A stretch of DNA of 64,000 nt, from the NCBI RefSeq assembly GCF_023055435.1, contig NW_025964383.1:36642001-36706000 (forward strand), read 5' to 3'. The notes beneath the pieces were generated by a model. It had not been told where the DNA came from. It worked only from the letters and a program-made list of their open reading frames with translations, and ran no database searches. This document shows positions 3,034 through 60,496 of this stretch, piece by piece. A program made the translations under genes and the position numbers. This DNA comes from Haliotis rufescens (lineage: Eukaryota). Each line of letters starts with the position of its first letter. Positions within the stretch are counted from its first letter, which is position 1.

Positions 3034-3707
3034 CTATGTCAGCGCGTCATGAATCAGTGACATCTTGGTGTCAGTGATGGCGATGTTGTCCCCGCTGATC
3101 AGCTCCATGTTGACAGTGCAGAAATCAGAAACACCTAACACGGGGTACAGGTCTTGCCGGAACCTCTCATCAAACTTCGCTAAAACAATCCCTCTGTTGA
3201 GATCAATGAAGGCGAGTCTGTCCCTCCCCACATCCAGCACCACGCCATAGTGGAGGGTGGCCTGTGTGCCGCGAGTGAATGACATGGTGTTCTGGTGACA
3301 CTTGCCCCGCTCCCCCTCCCGCCACACCACGGTACAGAGACTCTTCCCGTGTCTGCCACAGCTCGCTACACGGACACCCCAGGAGCGACGCTGTAGAGAA
3401 ACCCACCGCCCACTGTCCACCTGTCCTGCCTCTACCACCCCCATCTCCAGGATATACCACTCTCCCCCACTCACCACCCGCACCCTAGTGCGTGTCTCCC
3501 AGTATCTGGGTGTGCTGTATCCCGGGGTGGGAGCGGTGTGGGGTGGAGAAAGGGGGATGGGGGTGGAGGCACAGGTCCCCATATACTCCTGTAGCCTGCG
3601 CCTGTCATGTGACCGTGTGTCGAGCTCCGAGTTGACCAGCTCACTGTCTGTAGTTACGTGGCACGCCTCTGTGTTGGCTCGAGCGGCGTCCAGATGTAGT
3701 TTAGGAC
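3034..3707 (-). CDS. Terminal exon (19 of 19 reconstructed) encoding a PRY-SPRY/B30.2 domain
   Basis: Lies within ORF 3034-3762. Acceptor tctatatttccag|GTCCTAAA (phase 1). Motifs LHLDAARAN (PRY-like), YWETR, LEMGVV, SWGV and YGVVLDVGRDRLAFIDL...F...LYPVLGV match the B30.2 pattern YWEV...IGV.LD...G.LSFY...LYP. Stop TAG is followed by AATAAA at 3031-3026. Confidence 0.88.
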
Positions 3708-4822
3708 CTGGAAATATAGATGGTGTTTGTTGTGTGACGTGTTTATTTACTGTAGATGACAAAGTCCGACATTTGTCGTGAATCTCGTGAAGTTATCTGT
3801 AAACAGCGCGCTGAATGTTCAACTTAGTTTCGCCAGTTTGTCAATTCGGTCTTTTGTGTGACTCATAGCGGAATAAATATACTGTAAAACTATATGTATG
3901 TGAATTCTAAATGAATTTTATACAAAGTTACATGGTTTGATGAACAAATAAACATCAAATAAAACAATTTTTGACAAACCTTTGTTCCGCCCTGTTGCTG
4001 TGATATGGTAGTCAGACGTCAAAGTTCTTTGCAGAAATATTTACACAATTTCATGTTTAAACTACCACTGTGTGGATTCTAAACTCCTCTTGTACAATAT
4101 AGAATACAATGAAACAGAAAACTAAGACAAGTGAAGACATTTTGACATTTGTCCAGACAACAGACAACACATGAACAGATAACAGGAATGGCGGGATGTG
4201 CCGTTATAACTGCACGTTTGGGGATTCTAAATGATTGTTACACATAATTACAAACACCAAACCTATATATTTCTACATTTGTTTTATCAACGTTGTTTTG
4301 TCAATCTATCTACACTGATGTGTTATAAAACAGACACAGTTTGATTGTAAAATAATACATCATATTCATATCGCCTGATTTAACCTATCTCTGAGATGAT
4401 ATTTGTTTGTACTAATGTGTTTGTAAAGAAAGCAGCGACTGTGCCAGGTCATACATATTAACTATTGCAAACAAGTTCATTTGTTTTGTACCATCGCGAA
4501 AGTATTTTTTGTTACTCTCTTCTGATGTGTTTCACGTTTCGCATCTTCATATATGTTTACTGAGTTACACACATAACAATAATAATATCAAATTTCGTGT
4601 TTAAAGAGTTGGTTGTTAACACAACATATTTATTTACATAAACGTTTAATATACTCATGTTCATAATTATAGTCACCCCTATACAAAGACGCTTATATGT
4701 TAAGGGGGGGGGGGGGGGGGGGGGGGGGCATTACTTAATTATATTCACCCCTATACAAAGACGCTAATGTCGGGGGGTGGAGGAGCAATGGTGTTAATAA
4801 TGATAGTGTCCCTTATACAAAG

Positions 4823-4965
4823 AGTGAGTGAGTGAGTATGGTTTTTCGCCGCTTTTAGCAATATTCCAGCAACATCACGGCGGGGGACACCAGGAATGGG
4901 CTTCACACATTGTACCCATGTCGGGAATCGAACCCGGGTCCTCGACGTGACGATCGAACGCCACC
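4823..4965 (-). mobile_element. tRNA-derived SINE (family B)
   Basis: Minus strand has the Pol III B box GGTTCGATTCC, then GCTGGAATATTGCT...GCGGCG and a (CTCA)n tail. Confidence 0.85.
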
Positions 4966-4990
4966 ATCCCCCCATCCCCCCACCCCCCCA

Positions 4991-7900
4991 TGTATGTGTG
5001 TGTAACAAACTGCAACATCGCCGACTGTATGGAATGTATGTGTGTGTAACCACCTGCAACATGGCTGACTGTATGGAATGTATGTGTGTGTAACAAACTG
5101 CAACATCGCCTACTGTATGGAATGTATGTGTGTGTGTGTGTGTGTCTAACCACCTGCAACATCGCCAACTGTATGGAATGTATGTGTGTGTAACAAACTG
5201 CAACATCGTTGACTGCATGGAATGTATGTGTGTGTGTAACCACCTGCAACATCGCCGACTGTATGGAATGTATGTGTGTGTAACCACCTGCAACATCACC
5301 GACTGTATGAAATGTACGTGTGTGTAATCACCTGCAACTTGGCCGACTGTATGAAATGTATGTGTGTGTAACCACCTGCAAAATCGCTGACTGTATTGAA
5401 TATATACGTGTGTTACCACGTGCAACGTTGCCGACGACATTGAATGTACGTGTGTGTAACCAACTGCGATATCGCCGACTATATCGGATGTATGTGTGTG
5501 TAACCACCTGCAAGATCGCCGACTGTATGGAATGTATGTGAGTGTAATCACCTGCAACATCGCCGACTGTATGAAATGTATGTGTGTGTAACCACCTGCA
5601 ACATCGCCGACTGTATGGAATGTATGTGTGTGTAACCACCTGCAACATCGCCGACTGTATGGAATGTTTGTGTGTGTAACCACCTGCAAGATCGCCGACT
5701 ATATGGGATGTATGTGTGTGTAACCACGTGCAACCTTGCCGACGACATTGAATGTACGTGTGTGTAACCAACTGCGACATCGCCGACTATATCGGATGTA
5801 TCTGTGTGTAACCACCTGCAAGATCGCCGACTGTATGGAATGTCTGTGTGTGTAACCGCCTGCAACATCACTGACTGTATGGAATGTATGTGTGTGTAAC
5901 CGCCTGCTACATCGCTAACTGTATGGAATGTATGTGTTTGTAAGCGCCTGCAACATCGCTGACTGTATGGAATGCGTATGTGTGTGTAACCACCTGCAAC
6001 ATCACTGACTGTATGGAATGTACGTGTGTGTAACAACCTGCAACATCGCCGACTGTATGGAATGTATGTGTGTGGAGCCACCTGCAACATCGCCGACTGT
6101 ATGGAATGCATGTGTGTGTAACCACCTGCAACATCGCCGACTGTATAAAATGTATGTATGCGTAACCACCTGCAACATAGCCGACTGTATCGAATGTGTA
6201 TGTGTGTCGTCACCTGCAACATCGCCTACTGTAGGGAATGTGTGTGTGTGTATGTAACCACCTGCAACATCGCCTACTGTAGGGAATGTGTGTGTGTGTA
6301 TGTAACCACCTGCAACATCGCCGACTGTATGGAATGTGTGTATGTAACCACCTGCAACATCGCCGACTGTATGGAATGTATGTGTGTGTAACCAACTGCA
6401 ACATGGCTGACTGTATGGAATGTCTGTGTGTGTGTGTGTAATCACCTGCAACATCACCGACTGTATGAAATGTATGTATGCGTAACCACCTGCAACATAG
6501 CCGACTGTATGGAATGTGTATGTGTGTCGTCACCTGCAACATCGCCTACTGTATGGAATGTACGTGTGTGTAACCACCTGCAACATCGCCGATTGTATGG
6601 AATGCGTATGTGTGTGTAACCACCTGCGACATCGTCGATTGTGTGGAATGTGTGTGTATGTAACCACTAGCAACAACGACGATTGTATGGAATGCGTGTG
6701 TATGTAACCACTAGCAACATGGACGATTGTATGGAATGTAGGGAATGAATGTGTGCGTAACCACCTGCAACATCGCCGACTGTATGGAATTTACGTGTGT
6801 GTAATCACCTGCAACATCGCCTACTGTATGGAATGTACGTGTGTCTAACCACCTGCAACATCGCCGTTTGTATGGAATGCGTATGTGTGTGTAACCATCT
6901 GCAACATCGCCGACTGTATGGAATGTATATATATTTGTGTAATCACCTGCAACATCGCCGACAGTATGAAATGTACGTGTGTGGAGCCACCTGCAACATC
7001 GCCGACTGTATGGAATGTATGTGTGTGGAGCCACCTGCAACATCGCCGACTGTATGGAATGTATATATATTTGTGTAATCACCTGCAACATCGCCGACAG
7101 TATGAAATGTACGTGTGTGGAGCCACCTGCAACATCGCCTACTGTATGGAATGTATGTGTGTGGAGCCACCTGCAACATCGCCGACTGTATGGAATGTAT
7201 GTGTGTGTAACCACCTGCAACATCGCCGACTGTATGAAATGTATGTATGCGTAACCATCTGCAACATCGCCGACTGTAGGGAATGTGTGTGTGTGTATGT
7301 AACCACCTGCAACATCGCCGACTGTATGGAATGTGTGTATGTAACCACCTGCAACATCGCCGACTGTATGGAATGTATGTGTGTGTAACCAACTGCAACA
7401 TCGCCGACTGTAGGGAATGTGTGTGTGTATGTAACCACCTGCAACATCGCCGACTGTATGGAATGTGTGTATGTAACCACCTGCAACATCGCCGACTGTA
7501 TGGAATGTATGTGTGTGTAACCAACTGCAACATGGCTGACTGTATGGAATGTGTGTATGTAACCACCTGCAACATCGCCGACTGTATGGAATGTATGTGT
7601 GTGTAACCAACTGCAACATGGCTGACTGTATGGAATGTGTGTATGTAACCACCTGCAACATCGCCGACTGTATGGAATGTATGTGTGTGTAATCAACTGC
7701 AACATCACCGACTGTATGAAATGTATGTATGCGTAACCACCTGCAACATAGCCGACTGTATGGAATGTGTATGTGTGTCGTCACCTGGAACATCGCTAAC
7801 TGTATGGAATGTACGTGTGTGTAACCACCTGCAACATCGCCGATTGTATGGAATGCGTATGTGTGTGTAACCACCTGCGACATCGCCGATTGTGTGGAAT

Positions 7901-10900
7901 GTGTGTGTATGTAACCACTAGCAACAACGGCGATTGTATGGAATGTGTGTGTATGTAACCACTAACAACATCGCCGACTGTATGGAATGTATATATATGT
8001 GTGTAATCACCTGCAACATCGCCGACAGTATGAAATGTACGTGTGTGTAACCGCCTGCAACATCGCCGACTGTATGGAATGTGTATGTGTGTCGCCACCT
8101 GCAAACTCGCCGACTGTATGGAATGTATGTGTCCGTAACAAACTGCAACATCGCCGACTGTATGGAATGTATGTGTGTGTAACCACCTGCAACATCGCCG
8201 ACTGTATCAAATGTATGTGTGCGTAACCACCCGCAAAATCGCTGACTGTATAGAAAGTATATGTGTGTAACCACGTGCAACTCTGCCGACAACATTGAAT
8301 GTACGTGTGTGTAACCAACTCCGACATCGCCGACTGTATGGGATGTACGTGTGTGTAACCGCCTTCAAAATCGCCGACTGTATATTGTATGTGTTTGAAC
8401 CAACTGCAAGATCGCCAACTGTATGGAATGTATGTGTGTGTAACCACGTGCAACTTTCCCGACGACATTGAATGTACGTGTGTGTAACCAACTGCAACAT
8501 CTCCGACTGTATGGGATGTATGTGTTTCCAACCACGACCAACGTGCGATGCATTTATGAGTAACAACTAGCAACATTTACGATTGTAAGAAATATGTGTG
8601 TATGTAACCACTAGCAACATTTACGATTGTATGGAATGTGTGTGTATGTAACCACTAGCAACATGGACGATTGTAAGGAATATGTGTGTATGTAAGCACT
8701 AGCAACATGGACGATTGTATGGAATGTGTGTGTATGTAACCACTAGCAACATGGACGATTGTATGGAATGTGTGTGTATGTAACCACTAGCAACATGGAC
8801 GATTGTATGGAATGTAGGGAATGAATGTGTGCGTAACCACCTGCAACATCGCCGACTGTATGGAATTTACGTGTGTGTAATCACCTGCAACATCGCCGAC
8901 TGTATGGAATGTACGTGTGTCTAACCACCTGCAACATCGCCGTTTGTATGGAATGCGTATGTGTGTGTAACCACCTGCAACATCGCTGACTATATGGAAT
9001 GTATGTGTGTGTAACCACCTGCAACATCGCTGACTATATGGAATGTATGTGTGTGTAACCGCCTGCAACATCGCTGACTATATGGAATGTATGTGTGTGG
9101 AGGCACCTGCAACATCGCCGATTGTATGGAATGTATATATGTGTATGTAAACACCTCGGCATCGCCGATTGTATCAAATGTATATGTGTGTAACCACCTG
9201 CAACATCGCCGACTGTATGGAATGTGTATGTGTGCGTAAGCACCTGCAACATCGCCGAGTGTATGGAATGTATATATGTGTATGTAATCACCTGCAACAT
9301 CGCCGACTGTATGGAATGTATGTGTGTATAACCACCTGCAACATCGCCGACTGTATGGAATGTATGTGTGTATAACCACCTGCAACATCGCCGACTGTAT
9401 GGAATGTATATATGTGTATGTAATCACCTGCAACATCGCCGACTGTATGAAATGTATGTGTGCGTAACCACCTGCAACATCGCCGACTGTATGAAATGTA
9501 TGTGTGTATAACCACCTGCAACATCTCCGACTATATCGGATCTATGTGTTTCCAACCACGACCAACGTGCTATGCATTAATGAGTAACCACTAGCAACAT
9601 TTACGATTGTAAGGAATATTGTGTGTATGTAAGCACTAGCAACATTTACGAATGTATGGAATGTTGGTGTGTATGTAACCACTAGCAACATCGACGATTG
9701 TAAGGAGTATGTGTGTATGTAAGCACTAGCAACATCGACGATTGCATGGAATCTTGGTGTGTATGTAACCACTAGCAACATGGAAGATTGTAAGGAATAT
9801 GTGTGTATGTAAGCACTAGCAACATCGACGATTACATGGAATGTTGGTGTGTATGTAACCACTAGCAACATCGACGATTGTATGGAATGTGTGTGTACCC
9901 ACTAGCAACATGGAGGTTTGTATTAAATGTGTGTATATGTAACCACTAGCAACATGGACGATTGTATTAAATGTGTGTATATGTAACCACTAGCAACATG
10001 GACGATTGTATGGAATGTATGTGTATGTAACCACTAGCAACATGGACGATTGTATGGAATGTGTGTGTGTATGTAACCACTAGCAACATCGACGATTGTA
10101 TGGAATGTGTGTGTATGTAACCACTAGCAACATCGACGATTGTATGGAATGTGTGTGTAACCATTAGCAACATGGACGATTGTATGGAATGTATGGAATG
10201 AATGTGTGCGTAACCACCTGCACATCGCCGACTGTATGGAATGTACGTGTGTGTAATCACCTGCAACATCGCCGACTGTATGGAATTTACGTGTGCGTAA
10301 ACACCTGCACATCGCCGACTGTATGGAATGTACGTGTGTGTAATCACCTGCAACATCGCCGACTGTATGGAATTTACGTGTGTGTAATCACCTGCAACAT
10401 CGCCAACTGTATGAAATATATGTGTGCGTAACCACTAGCAACATCACTGACTGTATGGAATGTATGTGTGTGTAACCACCTGCAACATCGCCGACTGTAT
10501 CGAATTTACGTGTGTCTAATCACCTGCAACATCGCCTTCTGTATGAAATATATGTGTGCGTAACCACCTGCAACATCGCCGACTGTATGGAATGTACGTG
10601 TGTCTAACCACCTGCAACATCGCCGTTTGTATGGAATGTATGTGTGTGTAACCACCTGCAACATCGCCGACTGTATGGAATGTTCGTGTGTGTAATCACC
10701 TGCAACATCGCCGACTGTATGGAATGTATGTGTGTGTAACCACCTGCAACATCGCCGACTGTATGGAATGTATGTGTGTCTAACCACCTGCAACATCGCC
10801 GACTGTATGGAATGTATGTGTGTGTAATCACCTGCAACATCGCCGACTGTATGGAATGTATGTGTGTGTAACCACCTGCAACCCTGCCGTTTGTATGGAA

Positions 10901-13900
10901 TGTATGTGTGTGTAACCACCTGCAACATCGCCGACTGTATGGAATGTTCGTGTGTGTAATCACCTGCAACATCGCCGACTGTATGGAATGTATGTGTGTC
11001 TAACCACCTGCAACATCGCCGACTGTATGGAATGTATGTGTGTGTAACCGCCTCCAACATCGCCGACTATATGGAATGTATGTGTGTGTAACCACCTGCA
11101 ACATCGCCGTTTGTATGGAATGTATGTGTGTGTAACCACCTGCAACATCGCCAACTGTATGGAATGTTCGTGTGTGTAATCACCTGCAACATCGCCGACT
11201 GTATGGAATGTTCGTGTGTGTAATCACCTGCAACATCGCCGACTGTATGGAATGTTCGTGTGTGTAATCACCTGCAACATCGCCGACTGTATGGAATGTA
11301 CGTGTGTCTAACCACCTGCAACATCGCCGTTTGTATGGAATGTATGTGTGTGTAACCACCTGCAACATCGCCAACTGTATGGAATGTTCGTGTGTGTAAT
11401 CACCTGCAACATCGCCGACTGTATGGAATGTTCGTGTGTGTAATCACCTGCAACATCGCCGACTGTACCGAATGTACGTATGTCTAACCACCTGCAACAT
11501 CGCCGACTGTATGAAATGTACGTGTGCAGAACCGCTTGCAACATCACCGACTGTATGGAATGTATGTGTGTGTAACCGCCTGCAACATCGCCGACTGTAT
11601 GGAATGTTCGCGTGTGTAATCACCTGCAACATCGCCGACTGTATGGAATGTTCGTGTGTCTAACCACCTGCAATATCGCCGTTTGTATGGAATGTACGTG
11701 TGTCTAACCACCTGCAACATTGCCGTTTCTATGGAATGTATGTGTGTGTAACCACCTGCAACAACGCCGACTGTATGGAATGTATGTGTGTGTAACCACC
11801 TGCAACAACGCCGACTGTATGGAATGTATGTGTGTGTAACCACCTGCAACATCGCCGACTGTATGGAATGTTCGTGTGTCTAACCACCTGCAACATCGCC
11901 GTTTGTATGGAATGTATGTGTGTCTAACCACCTGCAACATCGCCGTTTCTATGGAATGTATGTGTGTGTAACCACCTGCAACAACGCCGACTGTATGGAA
12001 TGTATGTGTGTGTAACCACCTGCAACATCGCCGATTATATGGAATTTACGTGTGTGGAATCACCTGCAACATCGCCGACTGTAGGGAATTTACGTGTGTG
12101 TAATCACCTGCAACATCGCCTACTGTATGGAATGTATGTGTGTCTAACCACCTGCAACATCGCCGACTGTATGGAATGTATGTGTGTGTAACCACCTGCA
12201 ACATCGCCGACTGTATGGAATGTATGTGTGTCTAACCACCTGCAACATCGCCGACTGTATGGAATGTATGTGTGTGTAATCACCTGCAACATCGCCGACT
12301 GTATGGAATGTATGTGTGTGTAACCACCTGCAACCCTGCCGTTTGTATGGAATGTATGTGTGTGTAACCACCTGCAACATCGCCAACTGTATGGAATGTT
12401 CGTGTGTGTAATCACCTGCAACATCGCCGACTGTATGTAATGTGTGTGTGTCTAACCACCTGCAACATCGCCGACTGTATGGAATGTATGTGTGTGTAAC
12501 CGCCTCCAACATCGCCGACTATATGGAATGTATGTGTGTGTAACCACCTGCAACATCGCCGTTTGTATGGAATGTATGTGTGTGTAACCACCTGCAAAAT
12601 CGCCAACTGTATGGAATGTTCGTGTGTGTAATCACCTGCAACATCGCCGACTGTATGGAATGTTCGTGTGTGTAATCACCTGCAACATCGCCGACTGTAT
12701 GGAATGTTCGTGTGTGTAATCACCTGCAACATCGCCGACTGTATGGAATGTACGTGTGTCTAACCACCTGCAACATCGCCGTTTGTATGGAATGTATGTG
12801 TGTGTAACCACCTGCAACATCGCCAACTGTATGGAATGTTCGTGTGTGTAATCACCTGCAACATCGCCGACTGTATGGAATGTTCGTGTGTGTAATCACC
12901 TGCAACATCGCCGACTGTACCGAATGTACGTATGTCTAACCACCTGCAACATCGCCGACTGTATGAAATGTACGTGTGCAGAACCGCTTGCAACATCACC
13001 GACTGTATGGAATGTATGTGTGTGTAACCGCCTGCAACATCGCCGACTGTATGGAATGTTCGTGTGTGTAATCACCTGCAACATCGCCGACTGTATGGAA
13101 TGTTCGTGTGTCTAACCACCTGCAATATCGCCGTTTGTATGGAATGTACGTGTGTCTAACCACCTGCAACATTGCCGTTTCTATGGAATGTATGTGTGTG
13201 TAACCACCTGCAACAACGCCGACTGTATGGGATGTATGTGTGTGTAACCACCTGCAACAACGCCGACTGTATGGAATGTATGTGTGTGTAACCACCTGCA
13301 ACATCGCCGACTGTATGGAATGTTCGTGTGTCTAACCACCTGCAACATCGCCGTTTGTATGGAATGTATGTGTGTCTAACCACCTGCAACATCGCCGTTT
13401 CTATGGAATGTATGTGTGTGTAACCACCTGCAACAACGCCGACTGTATGGAATGTATGTGTGTGTAACCACCTGCAACATCGCCGATTATATGGAATTTA
13501 CGTGTGTGGAATCACCTGCAACATCGCCGACTGTAGGGAATTTACGTGTGTGTAATCACCTGCAACATCGCCTACTGTATGGAATGTATGTGTGTCTAAC
13601 CACCTGCAACATCGCCGACTGTATGGAATGTATGTGTATGTAACCGCCTCCAACATCGCCGACTATATGGAATGTATGTGTGTGTAACCACCTGCAACAT
13701 CGCCGTTTGTATGGAATGTATGTGTGTGTAACCACCTGCAACATCGCCAACTGTATGGAATGTTCGTGTGTGTAATCACCTGCAACATCGCCGACTGTAT
13801 GGAATGTTCGTGTGTGTAATCACCTGCAACATCGCCGACTGTATGGAATGTTCGTGTGTGTAATCACCTGCAACATCGCCGACTGTATGGAATGTACGTG

Positions 13901-16900
13901 TGTCTAACCACCTGCAACATCGCCGTTTGTATGGAATGTATGTGTGTGTAACCACCTGCAACATTGCCAACTGTATGGAATGTTCGTGTGTGTAATCACC
14001 TGCAACATCGCCGACTGTATGGAATGTTCGTGTGTGTAATCACCTGCAACATCGCCGACTGTACCGAATGTACGTATGTCTAACCACCTGCAACATCGCC
14101 GACTGTATGAAATGTACGTGTGCAGAACCGCTTGCAACATCACCGACTGTATGGAATGTATGTGTGTGTAACCACCTGCAACATCGCCGACTGTATGGAA
14201 TGTTCGTGTGTGTAATCACCTGCAACATCGCCGACTGTATGGAATGTTCGTGTGTCTAACCACCTGCAATATCGCCGTTTGTATGGAATGTACGTGTGTC
14301 TAACCACCTGCAACATTGCCGTTTCTATGGAATGTACGTGTGTGTAACCAACTGCAACATCTCCGACTGTATGGGATGTATGTGTTTCCAACCACAACCA
14401 ACGTGCGATGTAATTATGAGTAACAACTAGCAACATTTACGATTGTAAGGAATATCTGTGTACGTAAGCACTAGCAACATCGAAGATTGAATGGAATGTG
14501 TCTGTATGTAACCACTAGCAACATCGACGATTGTATGGAATGTGTGTGTATGTAACCACTAGCAATATCGACGATTGCATGAAATGTGTGTGTATGTAAC
14601 CACTAGCAACATCGACGATTGTATGGAATGTGTGTGTATGTAACCACTAGCAACATCGACGATTGTATGGAGTGTGTGTGTATGTAACCACTTGCAACAT
14701 CGACGATTGTATGGAATGTGTGTGTATGTAACCACGTGCAACATCGACGATTGTATGGAATTTGTGTGTATGTAACCACCAGCAACATCGACGATTGTAT
14801 GGAATGTGTGTGCATGTAACCGCTAGCAACATCGACGATTGTATGGAATGTCTCTCCATATAACCACTAGCAACATCGACGATTGTATGGAATGTGTGTG
14901 TATATAACCACTAGCAACATCGACGATTGTATGGAATGTGTATGTATGTAACCACGTGCAACATGGACGATTGTATGGAATGTGTGTGTATGTAACCACT
15001 TGCAACATCGACGATTGTATTGAATGTGTGTGTGTAACCACTTGCAACATGCACGATTTTATGGAATGTGTATACATATAACCACTAGCAACATCGACGA
15101 TTGTATGGAATGTGTGTGCATGTAACCACTAGCAACATCGACGATTGTATGGACTGTGTGTCTATGTAACCACTTGCAACATCGACGATTGAATGGAATG
15201 TGTGTGTATGTAACCACAAGCAACATCGACGATTGTATGGAATGTGTGTGTGTATGTACCCACTAGCAACATCGACGATTGTATGGAATGTGTGTGTATA
15301 ACCACTAGCAACATCGACGATTGTTTGGAATATGTGTGTACGTCAAAACTTGCAACATCGACGATTGTATGCAATTCCTTTGTATGTAAGCACTAGCAAC
15401 ATCGACGATTGTATGGGATGTGTGTGTGCATGTAACCACTAGCAACATCGACGATTCTATGGGATGTGTGTGTGCATGTAACCACTAGCAACATCGACGA
15501 TTGTATGGAATGTGTGTGTGTATGTAACCACTAGCAACATCGACGATTGTATGGAGTGTGTGTGCGTGTATGTAACCACTAGCAACATCGACGATTGTAT
15601 GGGATGTGTGTGTGTATGTAACCACTAGCAACATCGACGATTGTTTGGAATGTGTGTGCGTGTATGTAACCACTAGCAACATCGACGATTGTATGGGATG
15701 TGTGTGTGTATGTAACCACTAGCAACATCGACGATTGTATGGAGTGTGTGTGCGTGTATGTAACCACTAGCAACATCGACGATTGTATGGGATGTGTGTG
15801 TGTATGTAACCACTAGCAACATCGACGATTGTATGGGATGTGTGTGTGTATGTAACCACTAGCAACATCGACGATTGTATGTGATGTGTGTGTGTATGTA
15901 ACCACTAGCAACATCGACGATTGTATGGGATGTGTGTGTGCATGTAACCACTAGCAGCATCGACGATTGTATGGAATGTGTGTGCGTGTATGTAACCTCT
16001 AGCAACATCGACGATTGTATGGGATGTGTGTGTGTATGTAACCACTAGCAACATCGACGATTGCATGGAATGTGTGTTTATGTAACCACTAGCAACATAG
16101 ACGATTGTATGGAGTGTGTGTGTATGTAACCACTAGCAACATGGACGATTGTGTTAATTGTGTGTGTATGTAACCACAAGCAACATCGACGATTGTATGG
16201 AATGTGTGTGTATGTAACCACTTGCAACACCGGCGATTGTATGGCATGTGTGTGTATGTAACCACTAGCAAAATCGTCGATTGTATGGAATATCTGTGTA
16301 TGTAACCACTTTCAACATCGACGATTGTATGCAATGCATTTGTGAGTAACCACTAGCAACATCGACGATTGTATGGAATGTGTGTATGTAACCACTAACA
16401 ACATCGACGATTTTATAGGGCGGATTTGTATGTAACCACTAGCAACATGTACGATTGTATTGAATATGTGTGTATTTAACAACTTGCAACATCGACGATT
16501 GTATGCAATTCATTTGTGAGTAACCACTAGCAACATCGACGATTGTATGGAATGTGTGTGTGCATGTAACCACTAGCAACTTCAACGATTGTATGGAATG
16601 TGTGTGTATGTAACCACTAGCAACATCGACGATTGTATGGAATGTGGGTGTTTGTAACCACTCGCAACATCGACGATTGTATGGAATATGTGTGTATGTA
16701 GCCACTAGCAACATCGACGATTGTATGGGATGTGTGTGTGCATGTAACCACTAGCAACATCGACGATTGTATGGAATATGTGTGTATGTAACCACTTGCA
16801 ACATCGACGATTGTATGCAATGCATGTGTGAGTAACCACTAGAAACATCGACGATTGTATGGAATGTGTGTGTGTGTAACCACTAGCAACATCCACGTTT

Positions 16901-19900
16901 GTATGGAATGTGTGTGTATGTAACCACAAGCAACATCGACGATTGTATGGAATGTGTGTGTATGTAACCACTAACAACATCGACGAATTTATAGGGCGGA
17001 TTTGTAAGTAATCACTAGCAACATGGACGATTGTATGGAATGTATGTGTATGTAACCACTTGCAACATCGACGATTGTATGGAATGTGTGTGTGAATGTA
17101 ACCACTAGCAACATCGACGATTGTATGGAATGTGTATGTATGTAACCACTAGCAACATGGACGATTGTATGGAATGTGTGTGTATGTAACCACTTGCAAC
17201 ATCGACGATTGTATGGAATGTGTGTGCATGTAACCACGTGCAACATCGGCGATTGTATGGAATGTGTGTGTATGTAACCACTAGCAACATCGACGATTAT
17301 ATGGAATGTGTGAGCATGTAACCACTAGCAACATCGACGATTGTGTGGAATGTGTGTGTGTAACCACTTGCAACATGCACGATTTTATGGAATATGTATA
17401 CATATAACCACTAGCAACATCGACGATTGTATGGAATGTGTCTCCATGTAACCACTAGCAACATGGACGAATGTATGGAATGTCTGTGTATGTAACCACT
17501 TGCAACATCGACGATTGTATGGACTGTGTGTCTATGTAACCACTAGCAACATCGACGATTGTATGGAATGTGTATGTATGTTACCACTAGCAACATCGAC
17601 GATTGTATGGAATATGTGTGTGTGTGTAACCACTTGCAACATCCACTATTGTATGCGCTGCATTTGTGAGTATCCACCAGCAACATCGACGATTGTATGG
17701 AATGCATTTGTAAGTAACCACTAGCAACATCGACGATTGTATGGAATGTGTGTGTATGTAACCACTTGCAACATCGACTATTGAATGCGCTGCATTTGTG
17801 AGTTTTCATCTGCAACGTCAATGATTGTATGCGAAGAATGATGCATTTCTGAGTAACCACCTGCAACATCGATGATTGTACGTGATTTATTTGTGAGTAA
17901 TCAAAAGGGAACATCGACGATTTTATGTGATTTATTTGTGAGTAATCACGATTGTATGGAATGTGTCTCCATGTAACGACTTGCAACATCGACGAATGTA
18001 TGGAATGTCTGTGTATGTAACCACTTGCAACTTTAACGATTGTATGGAATATGTGTGTATGTAACCACTAGCAACATCGACGATTGTATAGAATGTGTGT
18101 GTATGTAACCACTAGCAACATCGACGATTGTATGGAATGTGTGTGTGTATAACCACTTGCAACATCCACTATTGTATGCGTTGCATTTGTGAATATCCAC
18201 CAGCAACATCGACGATTGGATGGAATGCATTTGTGAGTAACCATTAGCAACATCGACGATTGTATGGAATGTGTGTGTATGTAACCACTTGCAACATCGA
18301 CTATTGTATGCGATGCATTTGTGAGTAACCATCTGCAACATCGATGATTGTATGCGAGGAATGATGCATTTCTGAGTAACCACCTGCAACATCGATGATT
18401 GTACGTGATTTATTTGTGAGTAATCAAAAGGGAACATCGACGATTTTATGTGATTTCTTTGTGAGTAATCACCTGCAACAACAAGGATTGTATGTGATTT
18501 ATTTGTGAGTAATCACCTGGAACATAGAGGATTGTATGTGATTTATTTGTGAGTAACCACCTGCAACATCTACGAATGTATTCAATTCATTTGAGGGTAT
18601 CCATCTACAAGATCGATGATCATATGTGAAACATTTTTGAGAAATCGCTAGGAACATCGATGATTGTATCGAATGTTTAATGATGTATCCACCTTCAACA
18701 TCGACGATTGAATGCAATGCATTTGTGAGTAGTCACCTGCAATATCGACGATTGAATGCAATGCATTTGTGAGTAGTCACCTGCAATATCGACGATTTTA
18801 TGCAATACATTTGTGAGTAGTCACCTGCAATATCGACGATTTTATGCAATGCATTTGTGAGTAGTCACCTGCAATATCGACGATTTTATGCAATGCATTT
18901 GTGAGTAGTCACCTGCGACAATGATGATTGTGTGCGATGCATTTATGAGTAATAGCTTGCAAACATTGACGATTGAATGCGATGCATTTGTGAGGAACCA
19001 CCTGCAATATCGATGAGTGTATCACTTGTGTGTGTATGTATGATCGATGATTGAATGCGATGCATTTGTTAGTAACAACCTGGAACATCGATGATTGTAT
19101 GGAATGCATTTGTGAGTTATCACCTGGAACATCGATGATTGCATGCAAAGCATTTGTGAGTAAGCACCTGCAACATCGATTATTGTATGCAATGCATTTG
19201 TGAGTAATAGCTGGCAATATATTTGATGGTATGCGATTAATTTGTGGGTAATCACCTGCAACGTCGACATTTGCATGCAATGCATTTGTGAGTAGCTACT
19301 TGCAACATCGACGATTGTATGCAATACATTTGTGACTCATCACCTGCAACAACGACGATTTTTTGCAATGCATTTGTGAGTAACTACTATCAAAGTCGAT
19401 AATTGAATGCGCTGCATTTGTGAGTAACCACCTGCAATATCGACCATTGTATGCGTTTGTGAGTAACCACCTGCAACATCGATGATTTTGTGAAATGCAT
19501 TTGTGAGTAACCACTAGCAACATCGACCATTGTATGCGATGCATTTGTGAGGAACCACCTGCAATATCGATTATTGTATGCATTTGTGAGTAGGAACCTG
19601 CAATATTGATGATTGTGTGCAATGCTTTTGTGAGTAACCACCTGCAATATCGATAATTGTATGCATTTCTGAGTAGGAACCTGCAACATCGATGATTGTG
19701 TGCAATGCATTTGTGAGTAACCACCTGCAACATCAATGATTGTATGTGATCATTTGTGAGTTATCATCTGGAATATCGATGACTGTTTTGATTGAGTGTG
19801 TTTGTTACCACCACCAGCATCGATGATTGCACGCAATACATTTGTGCGTATCACTAGCAAATATCAATGATTGAATTCGATGTATTTGTGAGTAATCACC

Positions 19901-22418: not shown

Positions 22419-22419
22419 T

Positions 22420-27913: not shown

Positions 27914-28009
27914 ATGGGGAGAAACAGATAATCATTACAACTCTTCTCTCACTCAAACCCGTAAATCAAAGACGATGAACAGGCAGACTAAAGACAGTAA
28001 ATGCAACCC

Positions 28010-39591: not shown

Positions 39592-39665
39592 CTGCTTGGT
39601 GACGCGTTCCAGTTCCCTTTCAAGGTTTAAGGCTGTGGCATCATCAGACTGTTCTCTAAAAAACT
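39592..39665 (-). CDS. Exon 8, 74 nt, phase 1->0 (E-FFREQSDDATALNLERELERVTKQ)
   Basis: ccttctattttag|...GCAG|gtacgt. Coiled-coil-like peptide. Confidence 0.72.
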
Positions 39666-39786: not shown

Positions 39787-39816
39787 CTGTTTGCCGCTGT
39801 TTCATTATCCAAGAAT
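39787..39816 (-). CDS. Exon 7, 30 nt, phase 1->1 (D-SWIMKQRQT)
   Basis: ctttattttttcag|...ACAG|gtagag. Strong acceptor; symmetric exon. Confidence 0.62.
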
Positions 39817-40442: not shown

Positions 40443-41177
40443 TTAGTGTAGTGTAGTGCGGTGCAGTGCGGTGCGGTGCGGTGCGGTGCGGTGCGGTGCG
40501 GGGGTGCGGTGCGGTGCAGTGCAGTGTAGTGTAGACCGTGGTGTAACCTGTTACACACGCAGTTAGTGTAGTGTAGTGAAGTATAGTGTAGTTTAGAATA
40601 GTGTAGTGTAGTGTAGTGCAGTGTAGGCCATGGTGTAACCTGTTACATACGCAGTTAGTGTAGTGTAGTGTAGTGCAGTGTGAACCGTGGTGTTACCTGT
40701 TATACACGCAGTGTACTGTAGTGTTGTGTGGTTTAACATAGTGTAGTGTAGTGCAGTGTAGTGTAGTGTAGCTTAACATGGTGTTGTGTAGTGTAGATTA
40801 ACATAGTGTAGTGTAGTGCAGTGTAGACCGTGGTGTAACCTGTTACATACGCAGTGTAGTGTAGTGTAGTGTAGTGAAGAACGTGGTGTAACCTGTTACA
40901 TACGCAGTGTAGTGTAGTGTAGTGTAGTGTAGTGTAGTGTAGTGTAGTGTAGTGTAGTGTAGTGTAGTGCGTGGTGTTACCTGTTACATCAGCAGTTAGT
41001 GTAGTGTAGTGTAGTGTAGTGTAGAACGTGGTGTAACCTGTTACATACGCAGTGTAGTGTAGTGTAATGTAGTATAGTGTAGTGTAGTGTAGTGCAGTGT
41101 AGTGCAGTGTCGGCCGTGGTGTTACCTGTTATACACGCAGTGTAGTGTAGTTTAACATAGTGTAGTGTAGTGCAGTG
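40443..41177. repeat. (TAGTG)n microsatellite punctuated by a ~28-bp conserved motif (left arm)
   Basis: Motif gaccgtggtgtaacctgttacatacgca separated by variable gtgta runs. Confidence 0.95.
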
Positions 41178-44100: not shown

Positions 44101-46000
44101 GATTACGGATACCCTACACCAATCGCCTTTACGTATGAATGTTGCTATACCACCTGACCCACGCTGAGAAGTACTGGTACAGCTGCATTTATAGTAAACA
44201 TCAAAATCATCATGTATAGTGTTCATAAGGGAGGCATTTTGTTCACTTAACCAATGTTAAGTCACAAAGAATAGATCTGTGCTGTCTAGTCTGGTACATA
44301 ACTGATGTGTACCGTGCATAATGCCTCGTATGTTCCAAGTTGCTATTCGAAGCATACCGAGTAGTAACAGTGCACTATGTATAATGTTTATTGTTAGTAT
44401 GGCTTTTCATTCTCGGCTCCTGAGTTGTCATATGTATACCAAGAACTTTTTGGTACCCATTCTCTGCAGTTAACATTTTCAGGCCAGAACGTTTCATCGG
44501 CCAATATTGCTTTTGCACATTGTGTTGGCATATTTACACGTATTGTGTAAGTTGAATTTCGGCCTTCCCAATGCTTAAGGAGCTTCATATAACTAATTGT
44601 AACACCACGCTGTGTTGCATAGTCCTTGATCGCGTCTTGTACAATTTCAAAGGGCATGTCAGCTTTTACATAAGACAGAACAAGCCTCTTTTGTTTAAAG
44701 CGAGAGGCCCCAGAGAAGGCTTTTTTTCCACTGATCGTTCAGCTGGACTGTCCTTGATTGGCTTGTATGATTTTCTTCACTGGGGCTTTCGCATACAATA
44801 GTAAGGGACGGTTCATTGTTCGTGTGGTCACGAGATATTTCTTGTCGCGAGTGTCTCACATTGTTTGGCTTTTGTCTGTGGTCTCGGATTGTTGAGTTTG
44901 TTGATCTAGATGGGTCACCATCACTAATTGCTGGACAATGAGCTGCTGCTTGGGTTGTTGCTGTATTTTCAAATGTCACACGCAGGTCATCAGGATTCGC
45001 ACTTTTTACGGCTTCTGAGTACAATAGCTTACTTCTGGTGCTCATACAATCTATTTTCCCATCTATAGCAGACGTTCGTTTATCAATTGTTGATATTCTT
45101 GTATGTAGAGTTTCTTGGAGCTCTTTAATATCTACATTCTTACGTTATGAAAACAAGTTCTTTGTTCTTTTCCTCTAATGCAGTAATCATGTGAAACATG
45201 TCCTCTTCATATTTAGACTGGAAATCGTTCATTTTATCATAGATGACTGTAAAGCGTTCATTCATCTCTTCATGCATACACATTAGTTTTGAGAGGAAAC
45301 ATACAAGCACATCTTTGTCTTTATCATCCACAAGTTCAGTGTTTTCGTCAGATACTTCGTTACCGTGAGCACGTGATTTCTGTCGACTCATGACTTCCGA
45401 TTAAATAACTTGAGCAGGCACAGACCCAGTAATATAGCTATAGAGCAGGTACACATCTGATGCATATTTCATAAGCACACTTTTAGTCTGGCCGGCTCTT
45501 TTCACCCTCTTTATAAGGGCACCATCTGGAAAGTCAGGTTTTTCACTCTTTGCAATGTCATACAGTGAGAAACGAATGTCATTTAGTTGGTTTTCCTCAT
45601 CCGTGTATATCGTAGTCAACTTAGTTTCACATGTCTGTCTATCATACCCACTAAGTGTGTCGCGTAGCTCATTTAGGATACCATAGTCCAGAGAGTCGGG
45701 TTCCTGTGTAGAGTATCGTGGAGAACTGGTGTTGCTCATACTTTCAGCTAGTACGGACAATAGAAATAAAGTGAGTTACTTTCAGGTTGATGGATCCAAA
45801 TGTAGTAAGGTCCACATGGTATACATCCAATAATCCAAATGAGAATAAATCACACACCCTCTGAAGGACTTGCAAACTTCATATTCTTTCCACTGTCCAG
45901 TGAAGATCATATATAACATGTAGCTCCCTGTAAGCTTACACGGACGCTCAGGTCGAGGGAGGCAACACAAGCACGTCCTCACTCCACGGTGGCTTGGGTA
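41178..46000 (-). mobile_element. APE-type non-LTR retrotransposon (LINE) with ORF1 and EN-RT ORF2, frameshifted and 3'-truncated
   Basis: ORF1 pieces at 45760-44394. EN: MLRIATWNIRG (44355), TGDFNA, IDY, SDHLPI. RT: KSPGPDG, NYRGITL, QFGFR, KAFDRV, QG, ADD. Ends at ECICG, running straight into satellite. Clade not resolved. Confidence 0.93.
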
Positions 46001-57796: not shown

Positions 57797-57845
57797 CTTT
57801 TGTAGCCTGGAAATACCCAATGAGGATCTTGTCTTCAACTAGAAA
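57797..57845 (-). CDS. Exon 6, 49 nt, phase 0->1 (FLVEDKILIGYFQATK)
   Basis: ttcttgtttctctag|...AAAG|gtaagt. FLVED parallels MIVDD of exon 18. Confidence 0.78.
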
Positions 57846-57969: not shown

Positions 57970-58073
57970 CTCTTTTATGCTGCACAGAACATCTTTCTGT
58001 CCATGTATTCTCTGTTTAAACTCCATGAGTTGAGGTTTCATCCTAATCGCCAGGAGGTCCCGACCCCCACACA
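57970..58073 (-). CDS. Exon 5, 104 nt, phase 1->0 (V-CGGRDLLAIRMKPQLMEFKQRIHGQKDVLCSIKE)
   Basis: gtcttctgttacag|...AGAG|gtgaga. Confidence 0.8.
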
Positions 58074-58266: not shown

Positions 58267-58324
58267 CTGGTGAAAGGTCGTCAACTGGAAGATGTCGAAG
58301 TGCCTTTTCCTTTCGATCAAGTTC
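58267..58324 (-). CDS. Exon 4, 58 nt, phase 0->1 (ELDRKEKALRHLPVDDLSP)
   Basis: tttgtcaatattgtag|...CCAG|gtgaga. Confidence 0.8.
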
Positions 58325-59646: not shown

Positions 59647-59732
59647 AGTCATGGGGCGCTTTGATTTTACAGAAAAAAGCCGCAACACGTCCATTTCTTC
59701 AAAAAGGAAGTTTATTTGTCTTTGCCAGTGAT
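59647..59732 (-). CDS. Exon 3, 86 nt, phase 1->0 (D-HWQRQINFLFEEMDVLRLFSVKSKRPMT)
   Basis: tttcatgtctttccag|...GACT|gtgagt. Confidence 0.82.
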
Positions 59733-60118
59733 CTGGAAAGACATGAAACGTAAAGACACAAGTAAACCCCAGAAAGCAAAAGCATGCTACAATCAACATG
59801 TTTAAATATCCTACAGGCAGCAGGTTGTCATATTTCTGCCTTACCTCGGTCAAAACAACAACAAAAAAACATTACTGTCAAAGGGGTCTTAAATTAAGAC
59901 ACTGTTGGTGCATCTTGTGAACAAACTGTGATACATTTCACACAAGAACTGATACACATGTTTACAAACATCTCAGCCTTGAACCGTTGAGGACGTTGAG
60001 GATACCCTTATTTAGTGGAACATGTGGAATATTTGCTGAATATTCCCGAAATATCTTAATAACTGATCAATATGAGAACATGCAATATATATATTATTCT
60101 TGCGTGTTATGAACTCAC

Positions 60119-60161
60119 CATTTTCCAATGCATCTATTTGTCCTTTAATGCTGTCCACCTC
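60119..60161 (-). CDS. Exon 2, 43 nt, phase 0->1 (EVDSIKGQIDALEN)
   Basis: tgtatgtttcag|...AATG|gtgagt. Heptad-like peptide. Confidence 0.8.
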
Positions 60162-60446
60162 CTGAAACATACAATTAATTCATTATTCTTCTCACTGATT
60201 TTATTAATACACGCTCATACACTACATACACATACAAGCTGATGTAGATAACTAACCACGTGTAAGACAGTCATCAACGAAGTCATGAAGTTTTTTGTGG
60301 TCCATGTCAGTCAAGTGGTAAAGCAAAGCCTCACGGTAATTTCTTTAAGTCTATAATCGTTACATGTTACAAGATATGCTTATATAAGCCGATGTAAGAC
60401 TCCCAGTCACATATTGTACTTATTCAAAGCATCTATGTATACTTAC

Positions 60447-60496
60447 TCTTTTCATGGCTGTGTAACGCTTCTTCAGGTTTGCCAATTCCATTTGAA
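60447..60496 (-). CDS. Exon 1 of the reconstructed chain (internal exon), 50 nt, phase 1->0 (QMELANLKKRYTAMKR)
   Basis: aatctttgttgcag|...AAGA|gtaagt. The true first exon was not identified and may lie beyond 64000. Confidence 0.8.

What the first reader, a model, noticed from the sequence alone, without database searches (positions are those of the whole stretch)
3034..60496. Hidden 57-kb micro-exon gene: coiled-coil rod plus C-terminal B30.2/SPRY domain
Seen: 19 minus-strand segments with GT-AG borders chain into one stop-free frame (1874 nt, ~620 aa); 15 of them are under 100 nt and only ~3% of the span is coding. Known: B30.2 is the ligand-recognition domain of TRIM, butyrophilin and some NLR immune proteins. 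Inference: this is a lineage-specific TRIM-like or coiled-coil B30.2 recognition protein. No RING or B-box is visible in the window, and I do not recognise the rod region as any named domain.
Basis: partly seen in the sequence, partly recalled or inferred. Interest (0 to 1): 0.8.

Follow-up and report, generated by a model that had tools for sequence, protein, structure and literature searches.

The report
Abalone micro-exon gene ending in B30.2
The window holds 21 of the 22 coding exons of an already predicted but uncharacterised red-abalone gene, whose many tiny exons encode a helical stalk ending in a fast-evolving target-binding (B30.2/SPRY) domain of the kind used by innate-immune sensors.

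Summary
A public predicted protein, XP_048246365.1 (LOC124139577, Haliotis rufescens, 723 aa), maps at 100% onto the minus strand. It has 22 coding exons and all 21 introns are GT..AG. Twenty-one exons (1853 nt) lie at 3034-60496. Exon 1 lies about 10 kb beyond the window's end.

The last exon is a divergent PRY/SPRY (B30.2) domain. It scores below Pfam's cut-off, but a family profile hits only solved B30.2 domains and the Atlas model matches MID1/FSD1 SPRY.

There is no RING or B-box in the window, 60 kb downstream or 140 kb upstream, so it is not a TRIM, although its kin are.

The stalk is built from phase-1 exon pairs and contains an internal six-exon duplication. It is only partly coiled-coil-like.

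The genome holds at least 150 copies of this B30.2 exon. Among 19 close copies, residues 108-143 show 155.5 non-synonymous against 7.5 synonymous changes.

RNA support is thin. An immune-sensor role is inferred, not shown.

The scan had already noted this B30.2 family elsewhere in this genome. The gene is not hidden; its architecture is new.

The parts
60447..60496 (-). coding exon 2 (50 nt), first exon of stalk block A
   Evidence: exact match to P0064 aa 107-123; unique GT..AG solution
60119..60161 (-). coding exon 3 (43 nt)
59647..59732 (-). coding exon 4 (86 nt)
58267..58324 (-). coding exon 5 (58 nt)
57970..58073 (-). coding exon 6 (104 nt)
57797..57845 (-). coding exon 7 (49 nt), last exon of stalk block A
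39787..39816 (-). coding exon 8 (30 nt; phase 1-1 single exon), start of acidic linker
39592..39665 (-). coding exon 9 (74 nt)
39322..39355 (-). coding exon 10 (34 nt)
36506..36567 (-). coding exon 11 (62 nt)
36283..36310 (-). coding exon 12 (28 nt, the smallest)
35257..35306 (-). coding exon 13 (50 nt)
35090..35156 (-). coding exon 14 (67 nt)
33829..33878 (-). coding exon 15 (50 nt), first exon of stalk block B (duplicate of exon 2)
   Evidence: kept with AG/GT in the paralog
33571..33613 (-). coding exon 16 (43 nt)
32720..32814 (-). coding exon 17 (95 nt)
32051..32108 (-). coding exon 18 (58 nt)
29457..29563 (-). coding exon 19 (107 nt)
   Evidence: conserved in distant kin
25623..25662 (-). 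coding exon 20 (40 nt), last exon of stalk block B
25135..25185 (-). coding exon 21 (51 nt; phase 1-1). The copy at 25216-25266 encodes the same peptide, so the protein cannot tell which one the model uses
25043..25400 (-). 81-bp tandem repeat (4.4 units) holding four AG..GT-bounded copies of exon 21 (25297-25347, 25216-25266, 25135-25185, 25054-25104), 30 nt apart
3034..3707 (-). terminal coding exon 22 (674 nt including the stop): PRY/SPRY (B30.2) domain, P0064 aa 501-723
   Evidence: in three RNA-like runs depth falls and contig pieces end at 3707/3708
858..4522 (-). one unit of a 3.7-kb tandem duplication carrying the terminal exon. The twin unit (99.4-100% identical) runs from about 2.9 kb before the window's start to 858, and its B30.2 exon lies just outside the window
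4990..22110 (.). 17-kb satellite of 44-bp units filling most of the last intron
41152..44226 (-). LINE-type retrotransposon remnant in intron 7 (endonuclease ORF, with reverse transcriptase split over two ORFs)
60879..64000 (.). 41-bp satellite in intron 1, running off the window's end

Best explanation
The span is the body of Haliotis rufescens gene LOC124139577. This is a ~71-kb, 22-coding-exon gene whose introns are packed with satellites and LINE remnants.

Its product (723 aa in the public model) has three parts. (1) A 106-aa N-terminal domain of unassigned family, encoded outside the window. (2) A ~400-aa mostly helical stalk made of micro-exons that come in phase-1-symmetric pairs. It contains two copies of a six-exon, ~130-aa module (exons 2-7 and 15-20) around an acidic linker. 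(3) A single-exon PRY/SPRY (B30.2) domain.

Shown: the exon structure, the B30.2 assignment, the at least 150-copy abalone expansion of this exon, its attachment in kin to RING/B-box, CARD + B-box and (by weak matches) P-loop NTPase-like heads, and a strong excess of amino-acid-changing substitutions in defined stretches of the B30.2 exon.

Inferred: the protein is a cytosolic recognition or adaptor protein of the innate-immune type. The B30.2 surface would bind a rapidly changing (pathogen-derived or otherwise antagonistic) ligand. The helical stalk would pair or oligomerise the protein, possibly with its TRIM or NTPase kin. The N-terminal domain would pass the signal on. Lacking a RING, it would not itself be a ubiquitin ligase.
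For: Gene model. P0064 is 100% identical to the terminal exon and is XP_048246365.1 / LOC124139577. It maps exactly to 22 minus-strand blocks with one GT..AG solution at each of 21 junctions.

Internal logic. Intron phases are 1,0,1,0,1,0,1,1,0,1,0,1,0,1,0,1,0,1,0,1,1, with none in phase 2. There are nine exon pairs, each summing to a multiple of 3. Exon sizes are 50,43,86,58,104,49 against 50,43,95,58,107,40. Residues 107-236 against 353-482 score z = 6.1 over 500 shuffles.

Stalk homology. The stalk matches P0069 (3e-11), P0066 (1e-10), P0073, P0077, P0075, P0098, P0080, P0067 and P0002, and is 78% identical to H. cracherodii P0065. A paralog keeps exons 15-21 with AG/GT and no indel or stop.

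B30.2. The profile of 23 kin hits 45 distinct PDB sequences at E<=1, all B30.2 proteins, with the best MID1 at 2.3e-5. Pfam SPRY is hit in 12 of 23 kin, best 4.2e-5. The Atlas model of aa 495-723 gives TM 0.66-0.71 to MID1, MID2, FSD1 and BSPRY, and 26 of 30 feature hits carry SPRY/PRY.

Expansion. 150 matches were scored in the own genome, 146 of them without a stop.

Selection. Pairwise dN/dS has median 0.97 over 227 pairs, 102 of them above 1. Tree counts are 655.5 N against 136.5 S. Residues 108-143 give 155.5 N against 7.5 S (omega about 5.4, p 9e-9), while 144-179 and 207-223 give omega 0.5 and 0.28.

RNA-like runs. Depth falls from about 950-1060 (X1, X2; 286 in X8) to 5-13 just upstream of the acceptor in X1, X2 and X8. 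In the DNA-like X15 it falls only about four-fold (923 to 226). Contig pieces end or begin at 3707/3708.
Against: The model is a computational prediction, and I could test none of its 21 junctions with reads. The one reads call covered only 900-4800, the runs are contigs guessed to be RNA, about 3-5% diverged, and no loose end at 3707 was among the rows shown.

The window's own B30.2 sequence is below Pfam's cut-off (15.3-15.6 against 26.3 bits). The Atlas model of the whole protein is poor (pTM 0.36, pLDDT 0.57), and my own structure prediction could not be run.

In the nearest paralog the micro-exons are no better conserved than their flanks (94.4% against 94.8%), so purifying selection on the stalk of this young duplicate is not shown. 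dN/dS near or above 1 is also what relaxed constraint gives, and gene conversion among paralogs can distort parsimony counts.

Coiled-coil propensity is modest.

No functional or expression data for any family member were found.

An acceptor-like tttctttgaag lies 20 nt before the model's ATG, with no in-frame stop between them. The true N-terminus may therefore lie in an exon further upstream.
Confidence: 0.7

Rival explanations
1. It is a true TRIM gene whose RING, B-box and coiled-coil exons lie further upstream, beyond what the public model includes. The 106-aa 'first' exon would then be internal.
For: Many kin with this B30.2 exon are RING + B-box proteins of ~630 aa. An acceptor-like site lies 20 nt upstream of the model's ATG, with an open frame between them. 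Paralogs of exon 1 have open frames that extend upstream.
Against: tblastn of 40 kin against 264 kb (60 kb downstream to 140 kb upstream of the window, about 130 kb beyond exon 1) hit only the three B30.2 exon copies at E<=1e-3. In the window the only other rows were two weak P0057 matches (E 0.003 and 0.008) inside the 44-bp satellite. The stalk is homologous to the stalks of the non-TRIM, NTPase-like kin, not to the TRIM coiled coil.
Confidence: 0.05
2. The 22-exon model over-reaches. The transcripts actually made are shorter, for example stalk block B plus an extended terminal exon, or the terminal exon alone. The upstream exons would belong to another transcript or be decaying.
For: Public models of kin include 244-274-aa proteins that start just upstream of the B30.2 exon, among them P0001, whose N-terminus is collinear with the frame that stays open upstream of the acceptor here. 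H. cracherodii P0065 joins the exon-19 equivalent straight to a terminal exon extended upstream, skipping exons 20-21. X2 record 23 reads through the acceptor (3678-4004). No junction was verified by reads.
Against: The whole chain is 100% consistent with GT..AG at 21 of 21 junctions and shows a highly regular phase pattern with an internal six-exon duplication. A mis-joined model would hardly produce that. Stalk homology to kin reaches from about aa 98 to aa 500 (P0066 aligns over aa 114-500 in one stretch). The window has no ATG in the open frame upstream of the acceptor, only a TTG.
Confidence: 0.15
3. The gene is a relaxed or non-immune member. It could be a young duplicate drifting towards a pseudogene, or a cytoskeleton-associated SPRY protein like its nearest vertebrate structural neighbours (MID1, MID2, FSD1), with no role in recognising invaders.
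For: dN/dS is about 1 overall. Exon identity equals flank identity in the paralog. The best vertebrate matches are MID1, MID2 and FSD1. A broken third copy of the terminal exon lies about 16 kb downstream.
Against: All 22 exon copies compared keep an open frame, as do 146 of 150 genome matches, despite dS up to about 0.3. The rate is strongly uneven along the domain, from omega 0.28-0.57 in core stretches to 5.4 in residues 108-143. That is not the pattern of neutral decay. Kin combine the domain with CARD, RING/B-box and, by weak matches, NTPase-like heads.
Confidence: 0.1

Closest known systems
Abalone RING/B-box/coiled-coil/B30.2 proteins (RefSeq 'protein PML-like', 'TRIM56-like', 'TRIM45-like', ~630 aa; e.g. 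P0034, P0038)
   Same: They share the same single-exon C-terminal domain, 56-63% identical to the window's. It has the same conserved acceptor and is part of the same genomic expansion.
   Different: They carry Pfam RING and B-box domains. This gene has neither within 264 kb. Its stalk is made of micro-exon pairs and is homologous to the stalks of other, non-TRIM kin.
Abalone long kin with duplicated P-loop-like heads plus stalk plus B30.2 (P0066, P0069, P0075, P0077; 1000-1360 aa, 'uncharacterized')
   Same: Both the stalk and the B30.2 are homologous (E 3e-11 to 6e-9 over ~380 aa).
   Different: Those proteins have 700-1100 further N-terminal residues with only weak matches to STAND NTPase or Schlafen GTPase-like models, all below Pfam cut-offs. 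This gene has a 106-aa domain instead.
Vertebrate B30.2 recognition proteins: TRIM5alpha/TRIM25/MID1, butyrophilin BTN3A1, fish finTRIM and NLR-B30.2 (the fish families and TRIM5alpha's variable loops are recalled, not from a call)
   Same: PRY/SPRY fold and profile-level homology. Lineage-specific expansion in tandem arrays. Amino-acid-changing substitutions are concentrated in a few stretches of the domain. The domain is attached to varied signalling heads (PMC8195603, passages read).
   Different: There is no RING, B-box, Ig or NACHT part here. The sequence is too divergent for Pfam's cut-off. Ligand, partners and expression are all unknown.
TRADD-N (TRADD-like_N, PF20694) adaptor domains of marine invertebrate immune proteins (PMC8195603)
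   Same: The Atlas's features (score 0.80) and its own model (TM by hit 0.58-0.60 over 104-105 residues) point from aa 1-106 to TRADD-like_N clusters. Like those domains it sits at the N-terminus of a putative immune protein and has paralogs, 17 further matches in the genome.
   Different: There is no sequence support. Pfam gives nothing for it or for 9 paralogs. The Pfam model finds 3 other places in the genome and none of this family. hhalign of the two alignments gives probability 0.3%. This is a lead, not a membership.

Membership tests
B30.2 / PRY-SPRY domain | Match to Pfam SPRY (PF00622) above the curated cut-off | tested here: not met
   The window's exon scores 15.3-15.6 bits (E 0.018-0.021) against a cut-off of 26.3. 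Twelve of 23 kin match at E<=0.1, best 4.2e-5. P0019 carries a precomputed PF00622 hit.
B30.2 / PRY-SPRY domain | Profile-level homology to solved B30.2 domains | tested here: met
   The profile of A1 against the PDB gave 45 distinct sequences at E<=1, all B30.2 proteins (MID1 2.3e-5, TRIM25 3.8e-4, then BTN3A1/3, TRIM7, RNF135, TRIM14, MID2, HAPRIN, stonustoxin). Only 2 are at E<=0.001, and the aligned part is the C-terminal third.
B30.2 / PRY-SPRY domain | Beta-sandwich fold superposable on known PRY/SPRY domains | tested here: met
   The Atlas's own model of P0064 aa 495-723 gives TM (by query) 0.66-0.71 over 173-186 residues to MID1, MID2, FSD1 and BSPRY clusters, and 0.84-0.85 to molluscan TRIM-like clusters. 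Both sides are predicted models.
TRIM (RING / B-box / coiled coil) | RING finger | tested here: not met
   No match of the N-terminal ~400 aa of 40 kin (many with Pfam RING) in the window or in 264 kb around it. Pfam finds nothing in P0064 at E<=0.01.
TRIM (RING / B-box / coiled coil) | B-box zinc finger | tested here: not met
   Same searches as for the RING.
TRIM (RING / B-box / coiled coil) | Coiled coil ahead of the C-terminal domain | tested here: inconclusive
   A crude heptad score of my own puts 17.7% of stalk 28-mers above the 95% shuffle level and 7.6% above the 99% level. The stalk is 33% charged residues and 6.3% Pro+Gly. No dedicated coiled-coil predictor was available.
TRADD-N (PF20694) | Match to the family model, or profile-profile similarity to recognised members | tested here: not met
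   Pfam gives no PF20694 hit for aa 1-106 at E<=10 or for 10 members of A2 at E<=1. The PF20694 search of the genome finds 3 places, none of this family. hhalign of A2 against those 3 gives probability 0.3% (the 3-sequence profile is thin).
TRADD-N (PF20694) | Fold similarity | tested here: inconclusive
   Atlas structure rows 1-2 give TM by hit 0.58-0.60 and by query 0.35, with 104-105 residues aligned. The feature score of 0.80 is at a level that shuffled proteins reach a third of the time.

The most novel reading that the evidence does not exclude
The gene may be built for splicing-based variation of a recognition protein. Every stalk module is a phase-1-symmetric unit (nine exon pairs and two single exons), so modules can be dropped or repeated in frame. 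Exon 21 exists as four tandem AG..GT-bounded copies only 30 nt apart, so probably only one can be used per transcript. The B30.2 terminal exon is present as two intact tandem copies plus one broken one. Together these could yield transcripts with stalks of different length and alternative B30.2 ends from one locus. That would be a Dscam-like route to receptor diversity in a mollusc.
Probability: 0.1. Interest if true: 0.75.

Novelty: new variant of a known kind. Interest (0 to 1): 0.42.

Why it matters
B30.2 domains are the target-binding ends of several vertebrate antiviral and immune sensors. Here the same kind of domain, too divergent for routine annotation, has expanded to at least 150 exon copies in an abalone. 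It is attached to very different heads (RING/B-box, CARD + B-box, NTPase-like) and, in this gene, to a micro-exon stalk with an unassigned N-terminal domain.

The concentrated excess of amino-acid changes gives concrete residues to test for ligand binding. The gene also shows how a long helical stalk can be assembled and lengthened from in-frame exon-pair modules.

For abalone, a farmed and threatened group hit by infectious disease, the family is a candidate set of resistance-related receptors. All of them are still labelled 'uncharacterized' or misnamed after vertebrate TRIMs.

Tried and rejected
A first translation of 3034-3707 in the wrong frame gave stops. The open frame is the one of ORF 3034..3762.

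tblastn of the 26 short kin against the window gave nothing below E 0.1 outside the terminal exon. In hindsight three of those weak rows (32788-32732, 29525-29466, 25195-25133) lay on true exons 17, 19 and 21. They could not have been told from hundreds of chance rows.

The word-based protein search could not show the window's own protein because of its length filter. The search without a length limit found it.

TRADD-N for exon 1 was followed through Pfam, PDB, a genome search with the Pfam model and hhalign. It was not supported. The PDB profile hits of A2 to the p300/CBP ZZ finger (best E 0.0071) fall in the upstream open-frame extensions of paralogs, and I take them for chance.

I looked for an exon-versus-intron conservation contrast with the 37.44-37.47 Mb paralog. 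The duplication is too young for that: 94.4% against 94.8%.

The reads call gave no testable joint. Most listed joints and loose ends sit at an abundant repeat around 900-1030 and 1880-2080.

Literature searches for abalone + B30.2 (3 papers, none on this family), Haliotis + tripartite motif + expansion (8, none on it) and the locus or accession names (0) gave nothing. So I found no description of this family in the library searched. Supplements are closed. The source data of Figure 4 of PMC8195603 (TRADD-N architectures and counts by lineage) might list abalone proteins, and I could not see them.

Papers. For PMC8195603, PMC11508797 and PMC9334734 I saw the search listing and the passages returned by 'find'. 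For all others I saw the listing only.

Full report
WHAT THE WINDOW IS. The window is G000:C605:36642001-36706000. The contig length of 49,480,045 equals the 'longest contig' given for Haliotis rufescens proteins. The protein the window encodes is a RefSeq H. rufescens protein. So the genome is red abalone.

THE TERMINAL EXON. The sequence reads ...tatatttccag|GTCC..., with the exon starting at 3707. The word-based protein search found 26 proteins. All 24 that carry a name are Haliotis 'uncharacterized' proteins, and the best is 67% identical. Their alignment shows PRY/SPRY-like landmarks.

The window's own sequence is under Pfam's SPRY cut-off, at 15.3-15.6 against 26.3 bits. Three other lines support B30.2:
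- Twelve of 23 kin hit SPRY at E<=0.1.
- The family profile hits 45 distinct PDB sequences at E<=1, every one a B30.2 protein, with the best MID1 at 2.3e-5.
- The Atlas's model of aa 495-723 superposes on MID1, MID2, FSD1 and BSPRY SPRY domains at TM 0.66-0.71, and 26 of 30 feature neighbours carry SPRY/PRY.

THE CHAIN. The search of protein representatives, which has no length filter, returned P0064. It is 723 aa and its last 223 residues are 100% the window's exon. P0064 is XP_048246365.1, 'uncharacterized protein LOC124139577 [Haliotis rufescens]'.

Exact-word mapping placed the whole protein on the minus strand in 22 collinear blocks. For each of the 21 junctions exactly one cut gives GT..AG and the right residues. 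Twenty-one exons lie in the window, from 60496 down to 3034. Their sizes are 50, 43, 86, 58, 104, 49, 30, 74, 34, 62, 28, 50, 67, 50, 43, 95, 58, 107, 40, 51 and 674 nt, which sum to 1853. Exon 1 (319 nt) lies at window coordinates 73769-74087, outside the window.

Its counts (19 segments, 1874 nt, 15 under 100 nt) differ from the model's (21 exons, 1853 nt, 18 under 100 nt). Since 13,213 AG..GT-bounded open segments of 28-110 nt exist on this strand of the span, borders and open frames alone prove nothing. The match to an independent model and the features below are what count.

I used P0064 as the database returned it and handled exon products apart.

INTERNAL LOGIC OF THE STALK. A note of this scan on another gene of the genome (s1-808164) prompted me to compute the intron phases. 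They are 1,0,1,0,1,0,1,1,0,1,0,1,0,1,0,1,0,1,0,1,1, with none in phase 2. Exons 2-20 therefore form nine pairs, each summing to a multiple of three, plus the single 1-1 exon 8. Exon 21 is also 1-1.

Exons 2-7 and 15-20 have matching sizes: 50/50, 43/43, 86/95, 58/58, 104/107 and 49/40. Their products (aa 107-236 and 353-482) align with 29 identities in 137 columns. The score is 66 against -8.5 +/- 12.2 for 500 shuffles, the best of which reached 34. BLASTP finds the first half of this repeat at E 1e-4.

So the stalk is an internal duplication of a six-exon block around an acidic linker (exons 8-14).

A crude heptad score finds coiled-coil-like stretches around aa 101-150, 245-359 and 444-483. 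Only 17.7% of stalk windows pass the 95% shuffle level, so 'coiled-coil rod' is only partly apt.

Exon 21 lies in an 81-bp tandem repeat with four AG..GT-bounded copies 30 nt apart. Two of them encode identical peptides.

IS THE STALK A REAL PROTEIN? Its residues, from about aa 98 to 500, are homologous to the stalks of long abalone kin: P0069 3e-11, P0066 1e-10, P0073 6e-10, P0077 6e-9 and P0075 5e-8, with further matches in P0098, P0080, P0067 and P0002. They are 78% identical to H. cracherodii XP_071086328.1. A segmental paralog at 37.44-37.47 Mb keeps exons 15-21 with AG and GT, without indel or stop. Its exons are no better conserved than their flanks, 419 of 444 against 1871 of 1974 positions, so constraint on this young pair is not shown.

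READS. The single reads call laid contigs of three runs guessed to be RNA (X1, X2, X8) and one DNA-like run (X15) on 900-4800. None is on record as RNA, and their pieces differ from the window by about 3-5%.

In X1, X2 and X8 summed depth falls from 1060, 954 and 286 (bin 3651-3781) to 6, 13 and 5 (bin 3782-3912). In X15 it falls only about four-fold, from 923 to 226. X8 record 31 ends at 3707, X1 record 7 starts at 3708, and X2 record 23 reads through (3678-4004, depth 7).

This fits an exon border at 3707 plus some unspliced or genomic material. It is weak evidence. No junction could be tested, because exon 21 lies 21 kb away, and no loose end at 3707 was among the rows shown.

NOT A TRIM. 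The N-terminal halves of 40 kin (P0024-P0063; many with Pfam RING and B-box) matched nothing in the window except two weak P0057 rows inside the 44-bp satellite (E 0.003 and 0.008). In 264 kb, from 60 kb downstream to 140 kb upstream of the window, they matched only three copies of the B30.2 exon. Pfam finds nothing in P0064 at E<=0.01.

THE N-TERMINAL DOMAIN. Residues 1-106 have 17 further matches in the genome at 28-44% identity but no Pfam or PDB relative. The word search found no other protein of 398-1265 aa with it.

The Atlas points to TRADD-like_N, with a feature score of 0.80 and TM by hit of 0.58-0.60. The Pfam model itself finds three other places in the genome and none of this family. 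hhalign between the two sets gives probability 0.3%. I leave the domain unassigned, with TRADD-N as an untested fold lead.

An acceptor-like tttctttgaag sits 20 nt before the ATG, with no in-frame stop between them, so the true start may lie further upstream.

THE FAMILY AND ITS EVOLUTION. The genome holds at least 150 matches to the B30.2 exon, 146 of them without a stop. Most lie in arrays on this chromosome. Kin attach the exon to RING/B-box, to CARD + B-box (P0071), and to heads with weak, sub-threshold STAND-NTPase or Schlafen-GTPase-like matches (P0069, P0075). In 1.84 billion representatives only 63 proteins match at E<=0.001.

Among 22 exon copies of this genome, all open, pairwise dN/dS has a median of 0.97 over the 227 of 231 pairs with dS>0.02, and 102 pairs are above 1.

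For tree counts I dropped three near-identical copies (copy 2, L043, L047). On a tree of the remaining 19, parsimony counts give 655.5 non-synonymous against 136.5 synonymous changes. By stretch:
- Residues 108-143: 155.5 against 7.5 (omega about 5.4, binomial p 9e-9).
- Residues 42-53: omega 4.6.
- Residues 180-206: omega 2.2.
- Residues 60-75, 144-179 and 207-223: omega 0.57, 0.50 and 0.28.

This mix of a conserved core and fast stretches, with frames kept open, fits diversifying selection on a binding surface. Gene conversion and the simple method are caveats. Earlier notes of this scan reached the same reading for TRIM arrays elsewhere in this genome (s1-808085, s1-816330, s1-810424).

DUPLICATED END. 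Window 858-4522 is one unit of a 3.7-kb tandem duplication, 99.4-100% identical to its twin. The twin B30.2 exon lies just before the window's start, which confirms note s1-816410. The two exon copies differ by 3 non-synonymous and 0 synonymous changes. A third, broken copy lies about 16 kb downstream. I could not tell whether the young duplication is real or an assembly artefact.

VERDICT. The finding is a correct reading of a real, already predicted gene, not a hidden one. It is a non-TRIM member of an abalone-specific, fast-evolving B30.2 family. It has an unusual modular micro-exon stalk and an unassigned N-terminal domain. An innate-immune recognition role is the best-supported inference but is untested. 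I found no paper on the locus or the family.

Noticed in passing
window 4990-22110: A 17-kb satellite of 44-bp units (388 copies, 81% matches) fills most of the last intron. Its minus-strand translation gives long Cys/His-rich open frames that attract weak spurious protein matches.
   Followed up: partly
window 25762-27914, 28448-29391, 30685-31642 and 60879-64000: Further satellites (67-, 64-, 54- and 41-bp units) lie in introns 1, 18 and 19. Tandem repeats make up 42.8% of the span 3034-60496.
   Followed up: partly
window 41152-44226 (-) and 50709-51932 (+): A LINE-type element sits in intron 7, with its reverse transcriptase split over two ORFs plus an endonuclease ORF (Pfam RVT_1, Exo_endo_phos_2). 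A second 407-aa ORF on the plus strand has no Pfam match.
   Followed up: partly
window 900-1030 and 1880-2080: A very abundant short repeat. Summed contig depth reaches about 2 to 20 million in the DNA-like run and 28,000 to 850,000 in the RNA-like runs, with most listed joints and loose ends there. Copies at about 86% identity lie 21-28 kb downstream.
   Followed up: no
window 3708-3785 (-): The reading frame stays open for 18 codons upstream of the acceptor at 3707. Kin models translate the equivalent stretch: H. rubra P0001 starts there, and H. cracherodii P0065 splices the exon-19 equivalent to an acceptor about 78 nt upstream. A possible alternative 3' splice site.
   Followed up: partly
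about 15.4-16.1 kb before the window's start (G000:C605:36625906-36626608): A third, broken copy of the B30.2 terminal exon, 88-90% identical in DNA, in two pieces, one with a TAG inside.
   Followed up: partly
G000:C605:37436701-37470100 (L055, L054, L053, L033): A segmental paralog of at least exons 15-22, 90-96% identical including the introns. It also carries the tandemly repeated exon-21 unit, with three hits 81-82 bp apart. A second such paralog ends at 37.63 Mb.
   Followed up: partly
G000:C568, C17, C614, C35, C168, C580 and C605:47.4-47.66 Mb (L022-L032): Seventeen further single-exon matches to the 106-aa N-terminal domain share the motif G-C-[LM]-[IV]-F-x-F-x-H-E-S-x-E-D-A...V-K-E-x-I-L-H-F-L. 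No Pfam or PDB relative was found. This is a small unassigned domain family of the abalone genome.
   Followed up: partly
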